IMG/VR virus record: IMGVR_UViG_3300038424_000251
Span: 186,001-250,000 of that record
Strand: one strand, 5' to 3'
Length of the DNA stretch: 64,000 bases
This document shows positions 23,249-60,868 of the stretch, in pieces (position 1 is the first letter of the stretch; each line of letters begins with the position of its first letter). Position numbers and translations under genes: made by a program. Below the pieces are notes generated by a model, which had not been told where the DNA came from, did no database searches, and saw only the letters and a list, made by a program, of their open reading frames with translations.

Positions 23249-24873
23249 ATGAAAAACATTACTGCGAAACAAATCATAGACGCTTTGTTTGAATATATTG
23301 AAATAATGGGGTGTGGAAAAGCTGAAAAGTTAGGTGCCGAAGAAACAGAGTTTATGGCAAATGTTTGCCAATCTGATGAAGGTATAATGTTTGATGGTTT
23401 TGACGGTGATGCCTTCATTGACAGAAAACGATTTACAAAATTTATCAAAGAAAAATTCAGAAACTAATTTTGTGTTACGCAAATTATTCATTTGGCTTTT
23501 CGGTGGTTGTCGCCACAATTGGAGTAAATGGCGTGAAAATTTTGCCGGTTCTTCCTTTCAATGCCGTGAATGTTCAATATGTGGTAAACGTCAGGAAAAA
23601 ATGATATACAGATGGTAAAATTTGAAATTATAGTTCAGCCGTTGATTGCCGCAATGCTCCAAGACAGAATAGTATGCGATGTTACAGAATCTCATATTAT
23701 TCACCCTTTACTTGGAAAAATATCTTCATGGCGTGGTTCTGTTGAAGAAGAATATTTTTCAATTTTGTTTGCAAAAGGGGTTCTCACCGTTTCATTGGTG
23801 GAAAGAGAGTACAACTTGGGAAGTTCTGTTATCAATTATGCTATTTCTGAACATTTATCCAAAATATTAAAGGAAAATAAAGACAATACAGCTTTGAGAA
23901 CGGCAGCCATTCTTGATTACCACACAAGACAAAGCCCAAGAGAACAAAGCGAAGTTTCTTTTATTGATGTAATGGTGATATTGGAATGGCGGTATGCTGA
24001 ACGAGCTAAAATCTATTATAATCCGTTGGACGAATACATTGGACAAATATGAAAAAGAAAATTTTCAGGCAAATGTTGATTTATCGTGGAAACTCTACAA
24101 GTTTTGAATCATTTGTTGTAGCAACCGACTCAAAAGCGCTTACTTGGGAATTGCGTGGGCATGGTGAAACTCCTGCAGAAGCGGCTGAAAATGGATGGAA
24201 CAAATTTAATAGTAACGAAACCACTTGGAAAAATTTTGGTCGCGTAACTTAAATAATATGTTTACATTATCTTCACCATTCATTGAACCTGCTAAGTTCA
24301 ACGACAGAATTCATGGAACTAAATCAGGAGATACTGACTATAAACGTAATACTTACGCATTATGTCAGTGTGTTGATTTAACCAAGTTGAGTATTATTTT
24401 AGAAAAAATGGTTAACGAAGATAAACTCAATCCTCAGATAGCAAATGTTTTTATGACACAAGCAAGAGTATTGTTGGCTTCAATGCTTTCTGAAAATAAT
24501 AGGATTCATGATTTATGAAAAAATATAAATTCAACAATGAAGAAGTAAAGATTGTCGAACCTCTTAATATTAAAGATAAAGATGGAACTTGGGTTCAAAT
24601 CGAATATCTTACAGGTGAGAACAAAGGAGCAAGACAACCAATAACATTGGAAGAATTAATGGAAATTACATGAACAAAGCATTCCCCATGATAGACGGGC
24701 CACCGATTGAATGGGAAGAAGCTGAAAAAATATACAAAATTTATTACTGTTTATTTGGTAACATTCAATCACTTGAAGAAATTGCCAAACGTGGTGGTTT
24801 TAGATATAGTGAAGTCGAATACATGAAAAAAGAATATGAAAATAAAAAATGTAGTTGTAATAAAAATTTATGA
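23249..24873 (+). other. run of small hypothetical ORFs (23249..23467, about 23470..23618, 23612..24052, 24049..24252, about 24258..24518, 24670..24873)
   Basis: ORF track; abutting co-oriented ORFs. Confidence 0.55.
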
Positions 24874-40449: not shown

Positions 40450-41000
40450 CCCTATATCCACAGAGGGAGTAGTACCACCCTCACTTGTATAAATATTTAC
40501 ATATCACTCTCTAGCCCTATTGAGGGGTGAGTACCCCCAGCGCTGTTCTCGTCGAAAGCGTTATGTGACTGGTGGATTAAATGAGGCTGAATATCTACAA
40601 TGATTGTTTGTAGAAATAGGATAGTTTAAAGAGCTAGATAGTGTGTGCGTTTTCTTAAAATATTGTAAAAATCAGGCTCTTAAATTTAAGTAATTGTGTG
40701 AATGAATGTCGGTTGGTTACAGCTCTAAGAGCCAGAATTTCCCCATGCTGGTTAGATCATGATTATACTATTATACAGGGCTTTCTAGGTACTTTTTAAA
40801 ATTGTACTTAATATTAATTATAAGTACTTTTAATAATTTAACTAGGTACAGAAGTACTTCTAAGTACTATCATGATCGCCCAAAAAATTATTTTATTTTG
40901 CGTTGTGCGCTTTTAAATTTTATATTCAGAAAGCGCTTAATTCTAAAAAAATTAGGATTTAGCTCTTAAAAATATTTTTTCAGAGAACAGCGCTTTTTAG
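40450..41000. other. long non-coding locus with nested inverted repeats and six GTAC motifs; candidate replication origin or other DNA control site
   Basis: agcgctgttctc 40539-50 / gagaacagcgct 40983-94; gatcatgat 40755-63 / atcatgatc 40869-77; GTAC at 40789, 40804, 40824, 40846, 40854, 40864 in very AT-rich DNA. Confidence 0.45.
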
Positions 41001-49499: not shown

Positions 49500-49576
49500 G
49501 CAGGAGTAGCTCAACTGGATAGAGCATCTGCCTTCTAAGCAGATGGTTCCGGGTTCAAGTCCCGGCTCCTGTACCA
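49500..49576 (+). tRNA. tRNA-Arg(TCT)
   Basis: Cloverleaf: gcaggag/ctcctgt, anticodon stem tctgc-cttctaa-gcaga, T-arm ccggg-ttcaagt-cccgg, encoded CCA. Confidence 0.95.
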
Positions 49577-49582
49577 AAATTT

Positions 49583-49798
49583 ATGATTTTACAAACAGCT
49601 AATGATTTGTTGCTCTGTGAAATGGAAAAAAGTCATGGATTGAGACAATCCCTAGACGAAGCACATCAAATAATTGATGAACAAGATGAATCAATCTGGA
49701 AGTTGCAACAAACAATTTTTGCTTTACAATATCCCGAATTATGGGCAAGAATTAAAGCAAACGCAGTATCTCCTTTAAGGGAACTGATAACAATATAA
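49583..49798 (+). CDS. hypothetical coiled-coil protein
   Basis: ORF track. Confidence 0.55.
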   Translation: MILQTANDLLLCEMEKSHGLRQSLDEAHQIIDEQDESIWKLQQTIFALQYPELWARIKANAVSPLRELITI

Positions 49799-50022
49799 GA
49801 TTTTATGAAGAATGTGCCTGAACATGAAAAGATATTTGTAGTATTTCCGTCATTTGGTTACTGGGAAATTGACGGTAAGCCAGTTTCTTCGAGAGAAGCT
49901 TTCGCTAATTATTCAAAGGCTGTTTGGAAGCCATCGGAGATTGCTCTTCATCCTGAACGGTATTATTAAATAATAACTTCATCGCTTGACAAAATATAAA
50001 AACTGTGTAAAATCATAACATT

Positions 50023-50409
50023 ATGAAAAAAGCATTCACGTTGATTGAGTTAATGATTGTTGTTGCAATCCTTGGTCTTTTGGCTGCTATTGTTGTTGGT
50101 GGTAGCGGCGGTTGTAGTGTCAGTGATGGAACAAGAACAGGCACCATTTCAAAATTCAGTAACAAAGGCATCTTTGTCAAATCGCATGAGGGTGAATTGA
50201 TTTTGGGCGGTGTTATTCAAGGTAAGTCAGCATCGGCTAACGTTTGGGAATTCAGTTGCTTAAATCAGTCATTGGTCCCTGCTCTTGAGTCTGCGGTGGA
50301 TAATGGTAACATGGTTTCTTTGAAATATCATCAAACACTTTTGTATAATCCATTCCGAAGAAACACAAGTTATTTGATTACCAGTGTCACGGTGGTAACA
50401 AACAGGTAA
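50023..50409 (+). CDS. protein with type IV prepilin-type N-terminal cleavage/methylation motif
   Basis: MKKA-FTLIELMIVVAILGLLAAIV; C-terminal SDGTRTGTISKFSNKGIFVKSHEGEL domain. Confidence 0.8.
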   Translation: MKKAFTLIELMIVVAILGLLAAIVVGGSGGCSVSDGTRTGTISKFSNKGIFVKSHEGELILGGVIQGKSASANVWEFSCLNQSLVPALESAVDNGNMVSLKYHQTLLYNPFRRNTSYLITSVTVVTNR

Positions 50410-50492
50410 AATTTTATTCCCTTGTCTGATAGGGTTATTGAAAGACCGGACTTTCACAATTTTTTGCCGATACTAAAGATTGAAGATTAGTT

Positions 50493-50684
50493 ATGCCAGA
50501 TAATTTCATAAGAAACCGCGAAGGTAAAATCATTGGTCGCCAAGATGGCAATTGGCTTCGTGATGGTAGTGGAAAGCTTGTTGCTAGACATGATAAGGGT
50601 GATAATCGAACCAGAACGCGTGAAGGTAAAATTGTAGGTTCTGGTGACCAGAGATTGAGGGAATTAGGAAAATCAGAGGCTTGA
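50493..50684 (+). CDS. small repeat protein (R.REGKIIG / RDGSGKLVA / RTREGKIVG)
   Basis: ORF track; three internal beta-hairpin-like repeats. Confidence 0.65.
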   Translation: MPDNFIRNREGKIIGRQDGNWLRDGSGKLVARHDKGDNRTRTREGKIVGSGDQRLRELGKSEA

Positions 50685-50713
50685 CATTTTTTGGTTCTTT
50701 GATACTATTTATT

Positions 50714-51128
50714 CGTTGTCCAGTGGTAAAAGTCGCCGGTGAGCGATGTTCCCATTGGAATTAGCCAAAGCTGGGAGATGACTAGAACGTGACAGTAAAG
50801 CGTTCTTAGCTTAAATAAAAGCGCCGGGAACAAATACCGAAACACCGGAGACAGTTGAAACCCAATTGTTAGGAAAAGAGAGTAAGAAGATTACTCGTGG
50901 CCGCTAAGCGACCCGAAGGTTGAGACTACAACGTATCGGCGTAATGCTGATGGTAATGTGGAAAGAAATGAATGCTCCGAAAGGGGCCGTCTGGAGTCGG
51001 CTAAGTAAGAAACTTGGTCCATGCCGGTCTAAGTTTCTGAGGATGACCAGATGAAATTGTAGAGGCTGTATTGCCGATTGGCTGAAAGCGGCAACTTTCA
51101 TAACCAATCATCCAGCCCATGAATTTTT
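50714..51128 (+). ncRNA. candidate large structured ncRNA (~410 nt), family not recognised
   Basis: Own promoter (TTGACA 50681 / TACTAT 50703); no sense ORF; at least 10 helices; two pseudoknot-type pairings near 3' end; ends in U-tract. Confidence 0.65.
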
Positions 51129-51215
51129 TGTTGGCATATAGGTTCCTGAATAAGGACATTTAGGTTGGCTCAAACCCTTAAAGATTCCTACCTGCTACCG
51201 TGAACCACCAACAAA
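51127..51215 (+). ncRNA. candidate ~90-nt structured RNA
   Basis: Closing stem tttgttgg/ccaacaaa plus ggttc/gaacc; internal hairpins. Confidence 0.35.
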
Positions 51216-51249
51216 GCTTGATAATCTATTAAGTTGTGATAAGATAATT

Positions 51250-51329
51250 TTTTGTTGGTGAAAACAGTAAGCTGCTGCGAGGGTAATGCAAGACGATATT
51301 GTTTCCTCTAAAACTCTCCATCAATAAAA
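51250..51329 (+). ncRNA. candidate ~80-nt structured RNA
   Basis: Preceded by TTGATA-N16-TAAGAT; closing stem ttttgttggtg/catcaataaaa with GU pairs. Confidence 0.3.
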
Positions 51330-51351
51330 GACGTTCTTTGAATAATTTTGT

Positions 51352-51592
51352 GTTCCGTGACTGAGTAACTGCTACCGTTAGCAGTAAAGTAACATGAAGG
51401 TGAAGAATCTTTATGGATACGAAAGTAGCCGGAGTAAGTAAGGTAAAGGATGACTAAGTAGGCCAACTGAAAAATCCTTTGTAATCACGCTAATAAGCCA
51501 TAACGGCGTGGTTTAGGAATCGACGGGTTCCAACTGACTGAATAACTGAAAGGTAAGAATAGTCGAAGGTAACAAGCGAATCCTTCCGGAAC
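51352..51592 (+). ncRNA. candidate ~240-nt structured ncRNA immediately 5' of tRNA-Met
   Basis: Closing stem gttccg/cggaac; helices actgcta/tagcagt, aaaggat/atccttt, atcacgct/ggcgtggt, gaagg/ccttc; no ORF. Confidence 0.5.
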
Positions 51593-51602
51593 GCATTTGA
51601 AT

Positions 51603-51679
51603 AGCGGGGTGGAGCAGCTCGGTAGCTCGTCACGCTCATAACGTGAAGGTCGCTGGTTCAAATCCAGCCCCCGCAACCA
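51603..51679 (+). tRNA. tRNA-Met(CAT), initiator-like body with atypical anticodon stem
   Basis: agcgggg/ccccgca with 1:72 mismatch, tggagcagctcggtagctcg D-arm as in tRNA-fMet, anticodon stem tcacg-ctcataa-cgtga, CCA encoded. Confidence 0.9.
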
Positions 51680-51684
51680 ATTTT

Positions 51685-51750
51685 GTCGGTGATAGGTAGA
51701 AGCAGCAGTCGGTGTTAGTTATTTGCGCTCCCTATCACCGGCGCCCTTTT
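51685..51750 (+). terminator. 12-bp stem hairpin after tRNA-Met (terminator or small RNA)
   Basis: gtcggtgatagg 51685-96 / cctatcaccggc 51731-42, 34-nt inner region, then ccctttt. Confidence 0.45.
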
Positions 51751-51751
51751 T

Positions 51752-51937
51752 ATGGGATTATTCGGAAAATTATTAAAAACCGGCTTCGATGTGGTAACAG
51801 CGCCCATTGAAGTTGCGAAAGATGCAGTAACTCTTGGTGGGTTGTGCACCGATGAAGAAGAGACTTATACGAGTCAACGATTGAAACGTCTTCAAAAGGA
51901 TAGCGAAGAAATTCGAGAAGAAATTGACGAGCTGTAA
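51752..51937 (+). CDS. small hypothetical protein within tRNA cluster
   Basis: ORF track MGLFGKLLKTGFDVVTAP... Confidence 0.65.
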   Translation: MGLFGKLLKTGFDVVTAPIEVAKDAVTLGGLCTDEEETYTSQRLKRLQKDSEEIREEIDEL

Positions 51938-51987
51938 CTCATTAAAATTTTTGTAGTTTTCATCTTCCGGGGACTACTTATTCATGT

Positions 51988-52060
51988 GCGGACTTGGTGT
52001 TCTGGAGCACGGCAGGCTTCCAGCTTGCAGGGAAAGGTTCGATTCCTTTAGTTCGCTCCA
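51988..52060 (+). tRNA. tRNA-Gly(TCC)
   Basis: gcggact/agttcgc, U73 discriminator, anticodon stem gcagg-cttccag-cttgc, T-arm aaagg-ttcgatt-ccttt, CCA. Confidence 0.9.
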
Positions 52061-52064
52061 CAAT

Positions 52065-52143
52065 GGCCCTATATAGACTAATTGGATAGGTCGCAAGCCC
52101 TTCAAGCTTGAGAACGTGGGTTCAAATCCCCGTGGGGCTACCA
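52065..52143 (+). tRNA. atypical tRNA-Glu(TTC)
   Basis: ggcccta/tggggct, D-stem gact/ggtc, anticodon stem caagc-ccttcaa-gcttg, T-loop ttcaaat, CCA; C33, 4-nt acceptor-D linker, irregular T-stem. Confidence 0.7.
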
Positions 52144-54483: not shown

Positions 54484-54690
54484 TCAAGCGTTGCTTCTTG
54501 ACTTTGGTGGAGTGCGGTGCTGGATAATCTGATATGCTTGTTTGCAACGCCACGCAAGAGCTGGGTAATTTATATCTTTGCCCCTATTGCAACGAAAATT
54601 ATCAGCAAGACAAACAAACATTTGTTCCAGTTGGTCTGGTTTAAGTTTGAAAATTTTGCTTAAGAATTCGGAAAATTCTTTTTCATCCAT
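54484..54690 (-). CDS. hypothetical protein
   Basis: ORF track; stop overlaps -35 box. Confidence 0.55.
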   Translation of the reverse strand: MDEKEFSEFLSKIFKLKPDQLEQMFVCLADNFRCNRGKDINYPALAWRCKQAYQIIQHRTPPKSRSNA

Positions 54691-55081
54691 ATACAGTTTT
54701 TATATTATCAGAAGGTTTTAGTTTGGCAAGCACTTCACGAACGGTGGATAATGGTTTAATAATCTTCGGTTTACCACGGGGAGATAAGGAAAATCCCTGA
54801 CTTCGTTTTAAGATTTCAGCACGAGATAAAGAAAGGGTTTCTCTTACAGACCTGTTATGATTACACTCAAAACATGCCAACACTTTGCGTTTTTGACTTC
54901 TCTTTTTTTTCTTTACCCATCGATGGACATTATAACGGGAAACCACATGGTCAATTGTTGCCATGAGTGGGTCAGGCTGCCCCTTTATTGTAGGTTCACA
55001 TATAAGTTTTGTGACTCTTCTGCACCAATGACAACGGGGGTCTTTTTTGTGTAATTCCTCTTTGAGTGTTCGATTACTCAC
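54683..55081 (-). CDS. HNH endonuclease (McrA-type, zinc-binding)
   Basis: CHWC...ATIDHVVSR...VLACFECNHNRS. Confidence 0.8.
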   Translation of the reverse strand: MSNRTLKEELHKKDPRCHWCRRVTKLICEPTIKGQPDPLMATIDHVVSRYNVHRWVKKKKRSQKRKVLACFECNHNRSVRETLSLSRAEILKRSQGFSLSPRGKPKIIKPLSTVREVLAKLKPSDNIKTVYG

Positions 55082-56608
55082 TGATTTTGGAAATCGGTTA
55101 ATTCTTTAACCAAAGTTGATGGGTCAATCCGTTCGATGAAAATTGCTTTTCTTCCTTTATGAGCAACAATACTGAAATTATGAATTCTAACTCTGCGGAG
55201 AAATGATATAGTATCATCAATTGAGCAATAACGAGTGTAAACTTCTGCTGATTTATTCAGAACCAAAATTTCCAATCTGTTCATGATAATAATTATATCG
55301 GATGTTTAGATTTTGTCAAGCTTTATTGGATAAAACCTTCTCTTAATGCTTTGTAGAAGAAACTGGAAACTTGATAAGGTTTGGGTGCTTTACAAGTGTT
55401 GATTAAATTAAGACGAAATTTAACCCATATTCTTTTCAGTATTTTTGGATTTAATTTAATCATACTGTGGTATCTTTCTTTTTGAAAAGAATTTCCATTT
55501 TTTCGTCCCAATCTATTGACCGTTGAGCAACAGGACGGGGAAGGCAAAGGTGCCCTCTTTCGTCTTGATATATTCCGTTGAAGTGATAACCGTCAAGAAT
55601 GGGAACATGAACAACGTGAACAATGTTTTTTAGAACTTTTGTGACGATACAATTTGCGTAACCATCTGCAACTTGGAATTTGATATGGCGTCCGGGGTTT
55701 AGACCGGGACGGTTTGCCATATCTAAAGTTGCCAGTCGATTTTCCAGTAATGTCAATTCTTCACGCCATTTAATTCCATCACCATAAGAAAGTTTACCGT
55801 GAGTTTCAGCATCGGCCACAATTTGTTTAATGGCTTTATCAATTGTTTGTTTTAAACTCATAACGGTAATTTACTAAAATTTTGTAGAAAGTCAAGCGTT
55901 CTCAAAGGTAAAACCGAATTCAGACATCATTCCCGTAATCATGTAGATTTTCACATCGCGGGGAAGTTTTGTGTCTCGAAGAGCCTGAATTGCGTATTTT
56001 TCACCTTCTCGTAATTGATTTGTTCGGTCAACTACTTGCCAAGGGCGAAGGTCACGGCGAAGATTATTGAGAATGTTGGAAACTTTTCGCCACAAAATCT
56101 TATCATCCTTGACTCTAAGGATTAAAAGTTTGTAATGACGAATAGAGCCAAAAGATTCCAAGTTGGTCATACAACTCTATTTTAGTGTTCAAAAGTAATA
56201 CCATCAATTATGGTAGCCACAAGAATTACAACAACTAACGGCCCAACCCATAATGGAAATGTAATACAAAGAAATACAAATCCAACTAATTTTAGAATGT
56301 TCATGGTATTCTTATACCACACTTTTTATAGAAGTCAAGCCTTAGTCCCGGCCCCAAGGAATATCATCGGTTCCAAAAGTATCAGGATTTCGTTTTTTTC
56401 CACCAACTTTGAGGCTGGTTACTTGAACATTGATAGAATTAGGTGAAGTCTCATTTTTATCACCAACGATAGTCAGACCATCAAATCTCTCAGCTATGGT
56501 TTCCATTCCTTGATTGATCAATCCTTTAATTGAATTTTCGTCCAGAAATCCGCTTTTTTCATCGGAATGAACTATAACTTTTAGAGTGACTTCAAAGGTG
56601 TTTATCAT
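55078..56608 (-). other. run of small hypothetical cassettes (55078..55284, 55460..55861, 55892..56170, 56342..56608)
   Basis: ORF track; each with own minus-strand promoter. Confidence 0.6.
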
Positions 56609-56648
56609 GGCGGTAATTTATCAAAGATTTTATAGAAGTCAAGCCTTT

Positions 56649-56795
56649 CTACGAACCACCTTCAAAATTAGGATACTGTCGGGGGTCATCATCAACAAAA
56701 GGTTGAAGTTTCAATTTGTTTGATTTACGAGACTTTTGCTGTTTGGCTTTGCGCCAACGTTCATTCTTACTGTCATGTCTGTAACTTTTACCCAT
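56649..56795 (-). CDS. 48-aa basic peptide MGKSYRHDSKNERWRKAKQQKSRKSNKLKLQPFVDDDPRQYPNFEGGS
   Basis: Read by eye (below track cutoff); ATG 8 nt after structured RNA element. Confidence 0.55.
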   Translation of the reverse strand: MGKSYRHDSKNERWRKAKQQKSRKSNKLKLQPFVDDDPRQYPNFEGGS

Positions 56796-56802
56796 AAATT
56801 GG

Positions 56803-56909
56803 TGGCCAGTCTGGGTCTTCTCCAGTTACCAACGCCTCTTGGTCAATCGTAGTCAAATCCAAGCACTCCCTACGATTTAGTCAGCATCCGCCTTTTACGG
56901 CTCTGGCCA
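56803..56909 (-). ncRNA. candidate five-way-junction structured RNA (107 nt)
   Basis: P1 tggccag/ctggcca; gcc/ggc; aatcgtag/ctacgatt; accaa/ttggt; ctgg/ccag. Confidence 0.55.
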
Positions 56910-56997
56910 TTAAATTGACGGGGTTCCTACTACACGAAGCTTATGGGCCTTCGCCGCCACTCAAACTTTATACTGTTCGGTTACCCCGTTTAAAATC

Positions 56998-57297
56998 TTA
57001 TGACCTGCTTGGCCGCTTTGTTTTAGCAGCTCTTACCACTTCGGACTTTGATGTCCGCCTTGGTGACGTTTCTTTTTCAGTCACCGTTGCTACTGGTGCT
57101 TGAGCAGGTTGCTTTTCCTTCAATTGTATAAGCCGAGCAAGTTCTCGTTGACTTCCACCACGGTTGGTAACAAGAGTAATTTTGTCTGCTCGTGATAGTC
57201 TGTTATATTTGAGTTGCCGAGTTTCGGCTTCTTCCCGTTTCCGAGCCTTGCGAACATCGGCCTTTTTGTGTGAGTAACCTTTTTCTTTTCTTGCCAT
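56998..57297 (-). CDS. highly basic hypothetical protein
   Basis: ORF track, K/R-rich; own promoter. Confidence 0.65.
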   Translation of the reverse strand: MARKEKGYSHKKADVRKARKREEAETRQLKYNRLSRADKITLVTNRGGSQRELARLIQLKEKQPAQAPVATVTEKETSPRRTSKSEVVRAAKTKRPSRS

Positions 57298-57337
57298 AAT
57301 GATGATATTTTATATCTTTTTATAGAATTGTCAAGCG

Positions 57338-57991
57338 TTAGTTGGTTCTATATGAAAATCTGAAAAATTCAATAGGGGGATAACCGGGTCCAATAGGTGC
57401 GTTTACACTTGCAAGTGGAGTATTATTATGATTACTTGCATAAATAGACCATAATGGATTACCAAGATTGGTTGAAGCCCACAATGTCCACGATGTTGCA
57501 TTTGTTGGTATCCACGGTAATGAAATAGTTAAATTAGTTATTGGATAATTTGTCCATGTATATCCTACTGGTATGTAAAATATATTAGTTCTATGTAAAA
57601 CAGGACTATAATTAGTTTGCCAGTAGCCTACTAAATTTGTTGTTATATTAACTCGAAGATTTGGTGTAGATAACAATTGAAAATCTGTTGAATAATGTAT
57701 TGTTGGTGAAAATGAACCTTCAAGTTTATTTATATCATAAGAACTGATTACAAAATAATAAACTGTTTTTGGTAATAAATTAGAAATTGTTTGGTTTGTT
57801 ATACTTGCGTTACTATTAGTGATAACACTTGTATAAATTCCTAAAATAGTACCGTAATAAACTTTATAACCAGCTACAGCTGGATTTACACTTTTGTTCC
57901 ATCCTACGGTAAGAGTAGCACTTTCAGTGGTTGAAGTTAGAACTATTACTAATGATAGAAGAGTTCCTAAAAATTTTGATAAATGTTTCAT
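57338..57991 (-). CDS. secreted fibronectin type III domain protein
   Basis: Signal peptide; TLTVGWNKS...VAGYKVYYG...TISNLLPKTVYYFVISSYD; C-terminal W.L.ASTNL...W...FFR. Confidence 0.8.
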   Translation of the reverse strand: MKHLSKFLGTLLSLVIVLTSTTESATLTVGWNKSVNPAVAGYKVYYGTILGIYTSVITNSNASITNQTISNLLPKTVYYFVISSYDINKLEGSFSPTIHYSTDFQLLSTPNLRVNITTNLVGYWQTNYSPVLHRTNIFYIPVGYTWTNYPITNLTISLPWIPTNATSWTLWASTNLGNPLWSIYASNHNNTPLASVNAPIGPGYPPIEFFRFSYRTN

Positions 57992-58025
57992 GTTGAATGA
58001 TATTTTACACGTTTTTATAAAATTG

Positions 58026-58910
58026 TCAAATGTTTTGAATCACTTCAAATGAAGTTTTTGGAACATCCAATAAAACAGAATCGTTTTCCAGCCAAATGTC
58101 AACGAAACTTCGTCCCTGAGTTTCTTCTATGGAATAAACGTCAATGGTATCATTCGGGTAAAAGGTTTTTTCACCCGGCATATCGTTACCTTCATCATAG
58201 TCAACCGTGGTCAACTTTAAAAATTTCACTTTTTTCATATCATCCATAACTATAGAAGGATATGAAAAAAAGTCAAGCGCTTATTGATGACTTAATTAGG
58301 CTGAAGTTCGTTGAATGGCAACCCTTTAGCTTGTTCCTTGAAATAATCTGGGTTATCTGTAATATTCACGAAAAGTTTCGGGTCAATATTTGATGCGGTT
58401 GCTAACCGTTCACCCGTTTTAGGGTCAATAAGAATTAGCACTTTTGGATTCAATGGTAACGGTGTCATATTTTATATCTTACTGTGGAATTAGAAAAAGT
58501 CAAGCCTTTTGACGAAGAATAAGAATTATGACTACAATACCAAATCCAGCTAAAACAACGGTATAAGGTTCCATATTTTATGTATCACCGTATGTTAATG
58601 ATTCATCATTGCGTTCACGAAGGAATTCTCGATAAGCAGGTAATTTGTTAAGTTCTTCTAATACTTCTACAGAATCAGGAAGTCGTTCCTCTTCTATGTC
58701 AATTTCTTCTGAATCTGATTTCATTATTTATTCCAATAAATTAACTTGGTCAGGGTCACAATCAAAACAATCTCCCTTTTGGTCCTCAACTGTGATTAAA
58801 AGGCCATCGTGACGGATTATTTTCACCGTTCCCAAAAACTCATGCCAATCATCTTCGGCTTTTGGAGTAACCATAACTGCTTCACCAACTTCAAAACGAT
58901 TTTTAATCAT
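58026..58910 (-). other. small hypothetical cassettes (58026..58247, a 58-aa ORF MTPLPLNPK..., a 48-aa acidic ORF MKSDSEE..., 58728..58910)
   Basis: ORF track plus two short ORFs read by eye. Confidence 0.55.
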
Positions 58911-60604: not shown

Positions 60605-60675
60605 TATCACCTATTTTTGAGCACACTACTTTACGCTTACCACGAATTTAACATAAAATTCAATTATTGTCAAGC

Positions 60676-60780
60676 GTGACCATTAACGTTAAAGGAATCA
60701 TCGCAGGCTCCGGTCCCCTACCCTTCGCTTTCTTCGCTAGTCTGGCTTTCGGTGTCGCCGCCAACCCATTCCCAATTTCT
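60676..60780 (-). ncRNA. ORF-less promoter cassette carrying the 42-nt motif (copy 3)
   Basis: Promoter gcttgacatttcttaaaacaatggtaaaat (60787-60816); motif 60684-60725. Confidence 0.55.
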
Positions 60781-60868
60781 GAAAACATTTTACCATTGTT
60801 TTAAGAAATGTCAAGCGCCACCGCAACGCTTGACTTTCTAAAAGAAATTGATAAAGTGGTATCACAAT

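What the first reader, a model, noticed from the sequence alone, without database searches (positions are those of the whole stretch)
56803..56990. Compact five-way-junction RNA directly upstream of a 48-aa basic peptide
Seen (minus strand, 56909 to 56803): tggccag-a-gcc gtaaaa ggc-ggatgctgacta-aatcgtag [17-nt loop] ctacgatt-g-accaa gaggcg ttggt-aa-ctgg agaagac ccag-a-ctggcca. This is four hairpins closed by a perfect 7-bp P1, ending 8 nt before the ATG at 56795. A second GC-rich stretch at about 56920-56990 (hairpin cgaag/cttcg) lies between it and the upstream basic-protein gene 56998..57297. I recognise no riboswitch or tRNA-like family. Inference: a structured leader (riboswitch or autoregulatory protein-binding site), or an RNA partner of the two K/R-rich proteins flanking it.
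Basis: partly seen in the sequence, partly recalled or inferred. Interest (0 to 1): 0.6.

Follow-up and report, generated by a model that had tools for sequence, protein, structure and literature searches.

The report
tRNA-shaped RNA between two phage genes
The structure is real, but it is not a riboswitch: it is a tRNA-shaped RNA that is not a tRNA, carrying the same end signals as this giant phage's own tRNA genes, so it is most likely cut out by tRNA-processing enzymes, which would split one transcript into two messages.

Summary
The fold is confirmed: on the minus strand, 56909-56803, a perfect 7-bp closing stem encloses four hairpins (MFE -37.1 kcal/mol, z -3.06). No Rfam family matches. 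The window lies in a 365-kb peat phage with at least 53 tRNA genes, a tmRNA, a CCA-adding-enzyme gene and an RNase P RNA-like gene.

The element has the ends of a tRNA. It begins TTTAAT|G and ends CUGGCC-A-CCA-AUUU. In this phage, 31 of 53 tRNA genes end N-CCA-ATTT. The spacer before the element is identical to a tRNA-tRNA spacer. The helix layout is that of a long-variable-arm tRNA, but there is no T-loop or D-loop consensus, and both tRNA detectors reject it.

Every neighbouring gene has its own promoter placed for leaderless expression. The 48-aa ORF alone has none; its ATG follows CCA-AUUU directly.

Relatives carry different tRNA-like modules after the homologous 99-aa gene, not before the peptide gene. 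This argues against a leader or riboswitch for the peptide.

Best reading: a tRNA-like processing module, like a mitochondrial t-element. Excision would release a stable ~109-nt RNA and a near-leaderless peptide mRNA. No RNA data exist and covariation is nearly absent, so the mechanism is inferred.

The parts
57307..57334 (-). Promoter of the transcript that carries the element: TTGACA, 16-nt spacer, TAAAAT. The -10 hexamer ends 9 nt before the ATG of the 99-aa gene, which predicts a leaderless mRNA.
   Evidence: 11 of 12 consensus matches; sequence.
56998..57297 (-). Gene for a 99-aa K/R-rich protein, a member of a phage family with 279 representatives at E<=0.001. Function unknown.
   Evidence: no significant Pfam or PHROG match.
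56916..56989 (-). Module 1: a ~72-nt rod-like fold closed by the 7-bp stem ACGGGGU/ACCCCGU, ending G-UCA (a CCA with one change). Its 3' end is homologous to the CCCCG-CCA end of a 142-nt module in relative L004 that has a true T-arm.
56909..56915 (-). Spacer ATTTAAT between module 1 and module 2. It is identical to the spacer between tRNA-Asp and tRNA-Gln in the phage's tRNA array. U56909 would be position -1 for RNase P.
   Evidence: tRNA flanks.
56800..56908 (-). Module 2, the reported element: a 109-nt tRNA-shaped RNA. Parts in order: acceptor-like stem GGCCAG/CUGGCC (56908-56903 with 56809-56804); D-like hairpin 56901-56890; linker 56889-56878; long arm 56877-56845 with its 17-nt loop; variable-arm-like hairpin 56843-56828; T-like hairpin 56825-56811 with a 7-nt loop; A73 at 56803; CCA at 56802-56800.
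   Evidence: Not detected as a tRNA. The 5' 45 nt are 76% identical to L004, against 44% at near-neutral third codon positions of the adjacent gene.
56796..56799 (-). Trailer AUUU, the same as follows CCA in 31 of 53 tRNA genes of this phage. This is the proposed endonuclease cut site and the proposed 5' end of the peptide mRNA.
   Evidence: The E. coli model of RNase E cutting 1-3 nt after an encoded CCA is from PMC2190699.
56649..56795 (-). Gene for a 48-aa K/R-rich peptide, conserved at the protein level in relatives. It is the only gene in the cluster without its own promoter.
56615..56642 (-). Next promoter (TTGACT, 16-nt spacer, TAAATT, with an extended TG). Its -10 ends 6 nt before the ATG at 56608. 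It marks the end of the unit that holds the element.

Best explanation
The element is a tRNA-like processing module, resembling a t-element, inside a two-gene transcript of a huge phage. Transcription starts at the promoter at 57334-57307 and runs through the 99-aa gene, module 1, module 2 and the 48-aa ORF. Module 2 folds into the helix layout of a long-variable-arm tRNA and presents the determinants used by tRNA-maturation enzymes: U at -1, G1-C72, a 6-7-bp acceptor-like stem stacked on a 4-bp stem with a 7-nt loop, discriminator A, CCA, and the phage's standard AUUU trailer. RNase P (the host's, and possibly the phage's own RNase P RNA-like gene) would cut between U56909 and G56908. An endonuclease would cut in the AUUU trailer, followed by exonuclease trimming to CCA. 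Three products would result. (a) The 99-aa mRNA would end in structured module 1. (b) A stable ~109-nt tRNA-shaped RNA would end in ACCA. (c) An mRNA would begin at most 4 nt before the AUG of the 48-aa ORF. This last product mimics the leaderless arrangement that every neighbouring gene gets from its own promoter, in a phage without Shine-Dalgarno signals. What is shown: the fold, the tRNA-type ends, the shared signature with the phage's tRNA genes, the promoter layout, the absence of SD, and the conservation of part of the body. What is inferred: the cleavages, their enzymes, and the effect on translation.
For: The fold is the MFE and centroid, z -3.06. The element ends CUGGCC-A-CCA-ATTT. 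31 of 53 tRNA genes of the same genome end N-CCA-ATTT and most others end CCA plus an A/T run. The background rate of the heptamer outside tRNAs is about 2.4e-4 per position (derived). The 5' flank TTTAAT|G and the ATTTAAT spacer are the phage's usual tRNA leader and inter-tRNA spacer. The layout P1 plus 4 hairpins is that of a class II tRNA. Promoters at 58029, 57334, 56642, 56207 and 55895 each end 6-10 nt before an ATG, whereas the 48-aa ORF has no promoter and no minus-strand terminator lies in the unit. There is no SD enrichment genome-wide, and 65% of starts have T at -1. The same geometry occurs at true tRNAs: 7 of 53 are followed within 9 nt by the ATG of an ORF of at least 40 aa, against 2.2 expected, P 0.006. 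This element is the only convincing non-tRNA case: two weaker non-tRNA sites (160608, 155816) also pass the same filter and were judged chance matches. The phage invests heavily in tRNA processing: a CCA-adding-type enzyme, an RNase P RNA-like gene with E 9e-13 that keeps the catalytic core motifs and the L15 GGU that binds CCA, and a tmRNA. Relatives carry tRNA-like modules at the same place, some with a true T-arm (L004: ATAGG-TTCGATC-CCTAT followed by G-CCA-ATTT). The 5' 45 nt of module 2 are 76% identical to L004, against 44% at fourfold third positions of the adjacent gene. RNase P is known to cleave non-tRNA substrates that carry an RCCA end (PMC11143913, PMC12710915).
Against: There is no RNA evidence: all 24 runs that hold the locus are DNA, and the contigs show no variation. 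Covariation is almost absent. Only two C-G to U-G changes are seen in the 3-bp hairpin of L004, the 3' half is missing from the only homologue (contig end), and the L005-type modules show none. There is no T-loop or D-loop consensus, so recognition by an RNase P specificity domain is uncertain. The acceptor register that places CCA correctly has an A-A mismatch at 7:66. CCA reads UCA in module 1 and in L008. In L005, and in the contig of P0007, the peptide gene is expressed without such a module in front of it, so punctuation is not required for that gene. Conservation of loop sequences (CUGAC, GGGAGUG) suggests the body does more than act as a cleavage signal. The host is unknown and the phage has no RNase E/G. 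In the 231-nt fold P1 is not in the MFE.
Confidence: 0.45

Rival explanations
1. The element is a stand-alone tRNA-mimic RNA whose released form is the functional product. It would be excised as above but would act as a small stable RNA: for example a decoy or sponge for a tRNA-binding host or phage factor (anticodon nuclease, synthetase, EF-Tu, CCA-adding enzyme), or a partner of the adjacent 99-aa basic protein. This would be comparable to the unexplained stable RNAs in the T4 tRNA region.
For: The body is conserved, not only the ends: 76% identity with L004 over the first 45 nt, including the loop and linker motifs GURAAAGGC, CUGAC and GGGAGUG, against 44% at near-neutral sites. All 27 pairs are Watson-Crick. 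Linkage with the 99-aa gene family recurs in the window, L004, L005/6, L007, L008 and L038. Tested tRNA-type ends are as in the best explanation.
Against: Module content at the locus is very variable between relatives (75 vs 142 nt for module 1; a different 75-nt module in L005/7/8). More distant homologues of the gene have no module (L012, L040). No target can be named. There is no RNA evidence for accumulation.
Confidence: 0.25
2. The element is a degenerate tRNA relic: the remains of tRNA genes with insertions, kept only because they are harmless, with no present role.
For: Relatives have recognisably tRNA-derived modules at the same place. ARAGORN with introns allowed and a relaxed threshold calls parts of L004 and L038. 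CCA is mutated to UCA in module 1 and L008. Module 1 is about half the length of its L004 counterpart. No tRNA detector accepts module 2.
Against: There is no mismatch or wobble in 27 pairs, and z is -3.06. There is no residual similarity to any of the phage's tRNAs beyond shuffled controls. Identity with L004 is far above that of near-neutral sites. The ends exactly match the current tRNA processing signature.
Confidence: 0.12
3. One reading: a riboswitch or protein-binding autoregulatory leader that controls translation of the 48-aa peptide.
For: A compact multi-helix junction abuts the start codon. The fold would occlude the region upstream of the AUG. Basic proteins are encoded on both sides.
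Against: No Rfam match even at E<=10. There is no SD to sequester and no terminator. The association with the peptide gene is not conserved. The bodies of the modules differ between relatives while their tRNA-type ends recur.
Confidence: 0.08
4. A chance fold in an intergenic spacer.
For: A single sequence with almost no covariation. The opposite strand folds equally well.
Against: z is -3.06. The phage-specific heptamer occurs at the exact tRNA position. Part of the body is conserved. A 202-nt non-coding gap is unusual in a tightly packed gene cluster.
Confidence: 0.03

Closest known systems
t-elements of plant mitochondria and the tRNA punctuation of animal mitochondrial transcripts
   Same: These are tRNA-shaped sequences, some no longer tRNAs, that sit between coding regions. 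They are cut by RNase P and a 3' tRNA endonuclease and so define mRNA ends (Forner et al. 2007, PMC1920247). In animal mitochondria the resulting mRNAs are leaderless (from my knowledge).
   Different: This case is a phage in a bacterium-like expression system with sigma-70-type promoters. Here only one gene junction uses a non-tRNA module. The ends encode CCA, which mitochondrial tRNAs do not. No transcript ends have been mapped.
Small stable RNAs of the phage T4 tRNA region (species 1 and 2), among the 'transfer RNA-like molecules' of T-even phages
   Same: These are phage-encoded RNAs longer than tRNAs, matured with the tRNAs and of unknown function. This rests on my knowledge and on the reference list of PMC11143913.
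   Different: The T4 RNAs lie inside the tRNA cluster. This element lies in a protein-gene cluster, on the opposite strand from the nearest tRNAs (49500-52143).
Non-tRNA substrates of bacterial RNase P (pre-4.5S RNA, pre-tmRNA, the C4 antisense RNA of phages P1/P7, polycistronic mRNAs)
   Same: Each has a stem with a 3' RCCA and a suitable -1/+1 junction, which is enough for cleavage (PMC11143913, PMC12710915).
   Different: None of these has the full five-helix tRNA layout. Cleavage of this element is only predicted.
Class II (long variable arm) tRNA, Rfam RF00005
   Same: It shares the closing stem of 7, four arms in the same order, a 7-nt loop on the last arm, a discriminator and CCA. Its flanks are identical to those of the phage's tRNA genes.
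   Different: It lacks U8, the GG D-loop and the TTCRA T-loop. Its 'anticodon' arm has 8 bp and a 17-nt loop, and a 12-nt linker is present. It gets no covariance-model or ARAGORN call.
Bacterial and phage Y RNA-like YrlA (tRNA-mimicking domain)
   Same: It is a non-coding RNA that mimics tRNA and is also found in phages (PMC4201824, listed).
   Different: No Rfam match here. YrlA keeps T- and D-loop mimicry and a Ro-binding stem. No Ro/Rsr gene was looked for.

Membership tests
tRNA (Rfam RF00005 / ARAGORN) | Covariance-model score at or above 29 bits | tested here: not met
   No hit at the locus even at E<=10, while 56 other sites in the genome pass. No tRNA hit in the local E<=10 scan.
tRNA (Rfam RF00005 / ARAGORN) | ARAGORN call, also tried with introns allowed and a relaxed threshold | tested here: not met
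   Nothing at the default or ps80 threshold; at ps60 only an opposite-strand call.
tRNA (Rfam RF00005 / ARAGORN) | T-loop TTCRANN and a D-loop with GG | tested here: not met
   The loops read AGAAGAC and GUAAAA.
tRNA (Rfam RF00005 / ARAGORN) | 7-bp acceptor stem, discriminator, CCA, and the gene flanks typical of this genome | tested here: met
   The ends read TTTAAT|GGCCAG...CUGGCC-A-CCA-ATTT, and 31 of 53 tRNAs share CCA-ATTT. The register has an A-A at 7:66, or 7 perfect pairs if U-1 pairs with A73.
Bacterial RNase P substrate | U at -1, G at +1 paired to C72, and a 3' RCCA | tested here: met
   Read directly from the sequence. The determinants are as described in PMC12710915 and PMC11143913.
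Bacterial RNase P substrate | Coaxial acceptor/T-stem stack of about 12 bp with a T-loop-like cap | tested here: inconclusive
   The stack is 6 bp, an A-A, then 4 bp, capped by a 7-nt loop. This is one layer short and lacks the T-loop sequence.
Bacterial RNase P substrate | Actual cleavage at -1/+1 | not testable with these tools
   No RNA runs hold the locus.
Riboswitch / cis-regulatory leader | Match to a described aptamer family | tested here: not met
Riboswitch / cis-regulatory leader | Expression platform (terminator or SD/start sequestration that can switch) | tested here: not met
   No terminator on the minus strand. No SD usage in the genome.
Riboswitch / cis-regulatory leader | Conserved position upstream of the regulated gene | tested here: not met
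   In L005/L008 the module is followed by a promoter and another gene. The peptide gene lies after an 84-aa gene, or 1 nt after a 111-aa gene.
t-element / tRNA punctuation | tRNA-like fold directly abutting coding regions within one transcript | tested here: met
   There are 8 nt between the stop codon and module 1, and CCA-AUUU directly precedes the ATG. No internal promoter or terminator.
t-element / tRNA punctuation | Mapped mRNA ends at the borders of the tRNA-like fold | not testable with these tools
   Only DNA runs are available.
tmRNA | ARAGORN tmRNA call; G3:U70; tag reading frame | tested here: not met
   (-m option). The 3:70 pair is C-G.

The most novel reading that the evidence does not exclude
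A huge phage may run part of its gene expression in a mitochondrion-like way. tRNAs and tRNA-shaped non-tRNA modules would punctuate polycistronic transcripts, cut by RNase P (possibly the phage's own reduced RNase P RNA) and a trailer endonuclease. Downstream small ORFs would then be translated from leaderless mRNAs. The excised ~109-nt tRNA mimic would itself be a conserved functional RNA tied to a phage-specific basic protein family.
Probability: 0.2. Interest if true: 0.8.

Novelty: new variant of a known kind. Interest (0 to 1): 0.55.

Why it matters
Huge phages are known to carry many tRNAs, tmRNAs and CCA-adding enzymes (PMC7162821). These genes are usually read only as codon supply. 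If tRNA-type processing signals are also used to cut phage messages and create leaderless mRNAs, then tRNA arrays and tRNA mimics would be part of phage gene-expression architecture. That would explain why small ORFs are interleaved with phage tRNAs. The element is a compact, testable case: one junction, predicted cut sites to the nucleotide, and an obvious in vitro assay. The RNase P RNA-like gene found in the same genome is the natural enzyme candidate. I found no mention of such a gene in phage papers.

Tried and rejected
- **Rfam:** gathering and E<=10 scans of the window, the locus and the relatives gave nothing relevant.
- **Phage GenBank blastn:** no match.
- **Exact and degenerate DNA patterns in IMG/VR:** these returned only a second contig of the same phage (identical) and 22 chance matches.
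- **Protein-guided locus searches in IMG/VR:** same phage only. The genome-contig scan could not be run because the alignment was too diverse.
- **Metagenome scan and exact-protein look-ups:** these gave nine informative relatives (L004-L008, L012, L013, L037-L046), but none holds a complete homologue of module 2. L004 stops after 48 nt. One Logan contig with a diverged 3' part could be seen only as coordinates (record 18).
- **Read laying:** four peat DNA runs show a clonal population with no informative variants. No RNA runs exist.
- **Covariation in the L005-type module:** none.
- **Similarity of modules 1 and 2 to the phage's tRNAs or to relatives' modules:** not above shuffled controls, so a recent tRNA pseudogene is rejected.
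- **attP-like tRNA fragment:** rejected, because both strands of the acceptor stem are present.
- **Intrinsic terminator:** rejected (only three U after the stem).
- **tmRNA:** rejected.
- **Function of the 99-aa protein:** not resolved. No complex prediction was attempted because the partner in question is an RNA.

Full report
**Where the window lies.** The window is bases 186001-250000 of a 365,299-bp virus record that CheckV rates as complete. The record has 33% G+C. It recurs unchanged in at least 24 peat and wetland DNA metagenomes. ARAGORN finds 53 tRNA genes, including a CUA-anticodon suppressor, plus a tmRNA. The Rfam tRNA model finds 56 sites above its cut-off.

**Checking the observation.** On the minus strand, UGGCCAG (56909-56903) pairs with CUGGCCA (56809-56803) and encloses four hairpins: 3 bp with a 6-nt loop, 8 bp with a 17-nt loop, 5 bp with a 6-nt loop, and 4 bp with a 7-nt loop. 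All 27 pairs are Watson-Crick. This is both the MFE and the centroid structure at -37.1 kcal/mol, z -3.06 against 200 dinucleotide shuffles. The upstream stretch 56989-56918 forms its own rod closed by a 7-bp stem (z -2.44). Folding all 231 nt together breaks P1. The complementary strand folds equally well. Energy therefore supports a structure but does not identify the strand. Rfam gives nothing for the locus at gathering thresholds or at E<=10.

The element ends CUGGCC-A-CCA-AUUU and is preceded by UUUAAU. I listed every CCAATTT in the genome and the flanks of every tRNA gene. Of the 53 tRNA genes, 31 end N-CCA-ATTT. Most of the rest end CCA followed by TTTT or AAATTT. The commonest 5' leader ends in AAT. 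The 7-nt spacer ATTTAAT between module 1 and module 2 is letter for letter the spacer between tRNA-Asp and tRNA-Gln in the main array. Outside tRNAs the heptamer occurs about 2.4e-4 times per position, so finding it exactly one base after P1 is not chance.

**The fold has a tRNA layout but is not a tRNA.** The closing stem of seven plus four arms, the last a short stem with a 7-nt loop next to the 3' strand of the closing stem, is the layout of a tRNA with a long variable arm. In every other respect it fails:
- It has no U8, no GG in the first loop and no TTCRA in the last loop.
- It has a 12-nt linker, and an 8-bp arm with a 17-nt loop where the anticodon arm should be.
- The tRNA covariance model does not report it even at E<=10.
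- ARAGORN does not call it with introns allowed and the threshold lowered to 80%.
- It has no sequence similarity to any of the phage's tRNAs beyond shuffled controls.

**Transcription context.** The consensus scan finds strong minus-strand promoters at 58029, 57334, 56642, 56207 and 55895. Each has a -10 hexamer that ends 6-10 nt before an ATG, which predicts leaderless or nearly leaderless mRNAs. There is no minus-strand promoter or terminator between 57307 and 56795. The 99-aa gene, both RNA modules and the 48-aa ORF are therefore one predicted transcript, and the 48-aa ORF is the only gene in the cluster without its own promoter. Among 307 ORFs of at least 120 aa, no Shine-Dalgarno enrichment appears (15% against 9% background; no G peak). 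The region upstream of starts is A-rich, with T at -1 in 65% of cases. An AUG that sits 7 nt behind a stable helix, with no SD and no open A-rich leader, is poorly placed for internal initiation. A cut in the CCA-AUUU trailer would leave a 5' end at most 4 nt before that AUG.

**The same geometry occurs at genuine tRNAs.** Seven of the 53 tRNAs are followed within 9 nt by the ATG of an ORF of at least 40 aa. Only 2.2 are expected from random positions (binomial P 0.006). One of the seven is tRNA-Arg in this window. A search for GC-rich closure, N-CCA, an A/T spacer and an ATG-ORF recovers three of those tRNAs and, among non-tRNA sites, this element as the only convincing case; two weaker sites (160608 and 155816) also pass and are probably chance.

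**Relatives.** The 99-aa protein is a real phage family:
- Four homologues at 60-68% identity appear in the word-indexed search.
- There are 279 representatives at E<=0.001 in the exhaustive search.
- The conserved motifs are shown.
- There is no Pfam or PHROG assignment, and its nearest neighbours in the protein atlas are only viral hypothetical proteins.

Contigs of the closer homologues all carry structured modules directly after the gene:
- **L004** has a 142-nt module with a genuine T-arm (ATAGG-TTCGATC-CCTAT) ending G-CCA-ATTT. It is followed by AAT and the first 48 nt of a module 2 homologue, where the contig ends.
- **L005, L006 and L008** have one ~75-nt module ending GGUUUGCC-A-CCA-AUUU (UCA in L008). 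It is followed at once by a promoter and an unrelated 84-aa gene.
- **L007** has that module preceded by another one closed by a 7-bp stem.
- **L038** is a more distant relative. It has about 330 nt after the gene that can be read as three tRNA-like modules, two of which ARAGORN calls at a relaxed threshold with insertions. MFE folding supports these less clearly.
- **L012, L040-L043, L037 and L039** are more distant homologues with no such module.

**The peptide gene is not tied to the module.** The 48-aa peptide gene is conserved as a protein. In L005 it follows the 84-aa gene. In the contig of P0007 it starts 1 nt after a 111-aa gene. The modules therefore travel with the 3' end of the 99-aa gene, not with the start of the peptide gene. 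This is the main argument against a leader or riboswitch for the peptide.

**Is module 2 under selection?** Only 45 nt can be compared with L004. They are 76% identical, like first and second codon positions of the adjacent gene (78% and 81%). Third positions at conserved fourfold-family codons are 44% identical. The conserved parts include single-stranded motifs (GURAAAGGC, CUGAC, GGGAGUG). In the 3-bp hairpin two C-G pairs become U-G. This is weak evidence, but it speaks against a decaying relic and suggests the body matters as well as the ends. No other covariation is available: the population in four further runs is clonal, and the L005-type modules are too similar to one another.

**Processing machinery in the same genome.** These features lie outside the window.
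- A 496-aa open frame matches the PolyA_pol head domain of CCA-adding enzymes (E 1.2e-19).
- Between tRNA-Leu(gag) and tRNA-Ala(ggc), at 293569-293850, there is a full-length match to bacterial class A RNase P RNA (44.1 bits, E about 1e-12, below Rfam's 100-bit gathering score). The alignment keeps GAGGAAGUUC, the P4 strands, GCAAG..CAAAUAGGGAC, the L15 GGGUA that pairs with CCA in E. coli, and ACAGAACC. The specificity-domain part aligns poorly. It has its own promoter-like site and runs into the next tRNA.
- No RNase E/G homologue is present.
- I found no paper that mentions a phage-encoded RNase P RNA. The huge-phage survey lists CCA-adding enzymes and tmRNAs but not RNase P.

**Mechanism proposed.** The following steps are inferred.
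1. RNase P cuts between U56909 and G56908, using U-1, G1-C72 and the ACCA end.
2. An endonuclease cuts in the AUUU trailer. In E. coli, RNase E cuts 1-3 nt after an encoded CCA (PMC2190699). AA|UUU fits the RNase E preference as I remember it.
3. Exonucleases trim back to CCA.

The result would be a 99-aa mRNA ending in module 1, a ~109-nt tRNA-shaped RNA, and a near-leaderless peptide mRNA. The closest precedents are plant mitochondrial t-elements (PMC1920247) and mitochondrial tRNA punctuation, the unexplained stable RNAs of the T4 tRNA region, and the non-tRNA RNase P substrates listed in PMC11143913. Whether the excised RNA has its own job (decoy, or partner of the basic protein) is the main rival reading and is not exclusive of the first.

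**Verdict.** The riboswitch or leader interpretation is not supported. The element is best described as a tRNA-shaped non-tRNA module carrying the phage's tRNA processing signature. It is a new variant of a known kind (tRNA-like processing elements). Confidence in the processing model is 0.45. The work is limited by the lack of any RNA data and of full-length homologues.

Noticed in passing
Outside the window: genome G000:C1:293569-293850 (+) = L047:270-551: An RNase P RNA-like gene inside the phage's tRNA array. It gives a full-length match to Rfam RF00010 (44.1 bits, E about 1e-12, below the 100-bit gathering score). The catalytic core motifs and the CCA-binding L15 GGU are kept, the specificity-domain part aligns poorly, and it has its own promoter-like site. 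I found no paper describing a phage-encoded RNase P RNA.
   Followed up: partly
Outside the window: genome 8900-9346 (-), 260388-260791 (+), 266814-266888 (+): A CCA-adding-enzyme-type ORF (PolyA_pol domain, 496-aa open frame), a tmRNA, and a tRNA with a CUA anticodon (amber suppressor type). The 48-aa ORF of the finding ends in TAG. I did not test whether TAG is recoded.
   Followed up: no
window 55868-58029, minus strand: A series of small genes, each with a TTGAC(A/T), 16-17-nt spacer, TAAA(A/T)T promoter whose -10 ends 6-10 nt before the ATG. This predicts leaderless mRNAs. Genome-wide there is no Shine-Dalgarno signal, and T is at -1 in 65% of starts.
   Followed up: partly
window 49500-49576 (+) and downstream: tRNA-Arg(tct) ends CCA-AAATTT and is followed at once by the ATG of a 71-aa ORF. 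Six further tRNAs in the genome have the same tRNA-then-ORF geometry.
   Followed up: partly
Outside the window: genome 286742-286860, 279470-279546, 281037-281116, 282640-282717 (+): Further non-canonical tRNA-like genes in the main array, all ending CCA-A(A)TTT. The first is 119 nt long, and ARAGORN calls it tRNA-Val(tac) only when an insertion of 25 nt is allowed. The others have T-arms but were missed by ARAGORN or scored weakly.
   Followed up: partly
window 50860-51080 (+), 51740-51880 (+), 40470-40620, 60640-60810, 24090-24220: GC-rich stretches (about 50-54% against a 33% genome) with no long open frame and stable predicted folds. None matches an Rfam family. They are possibly further non-coding RNAs.
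   Followed up: no
window 56998-57297 (-) and alignment A3: The 99-aa basic protein family has a conserved core (GY.H.KADARK..KR.EAE.RQ.KYD.L....KI.L...RGGSKRELARL) and a tail (KS.VV..AK..RPSKS). The RGGS.REL.RL stretch resembles a helix-extended-helix/SAP-type nucleic-acid-binding motif. This is from memory and was not tested.
   Followed up: no
L046:515-644 and L045:296-440: More distant homologues of the 99-aa gene are followed by other structured RNAs. One is a promoter-driven ~90-nt fold closed by a 7-bp stem and ending in U6; another is a strong GC hairpin. The position after this gene seems to be a hotspot for small RNAs of different kinds.
   Followed up: no
window 54683-55081 (-); L038:2193-2492: An HNH endonuclease-like ORF lies 1.7 kb downstream of the finding (PHROG 8660, E 1.3e-5). 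A TnpB/IS605 OrfB gene lies next to the homologous locus in relative L038.
   Followed up: no
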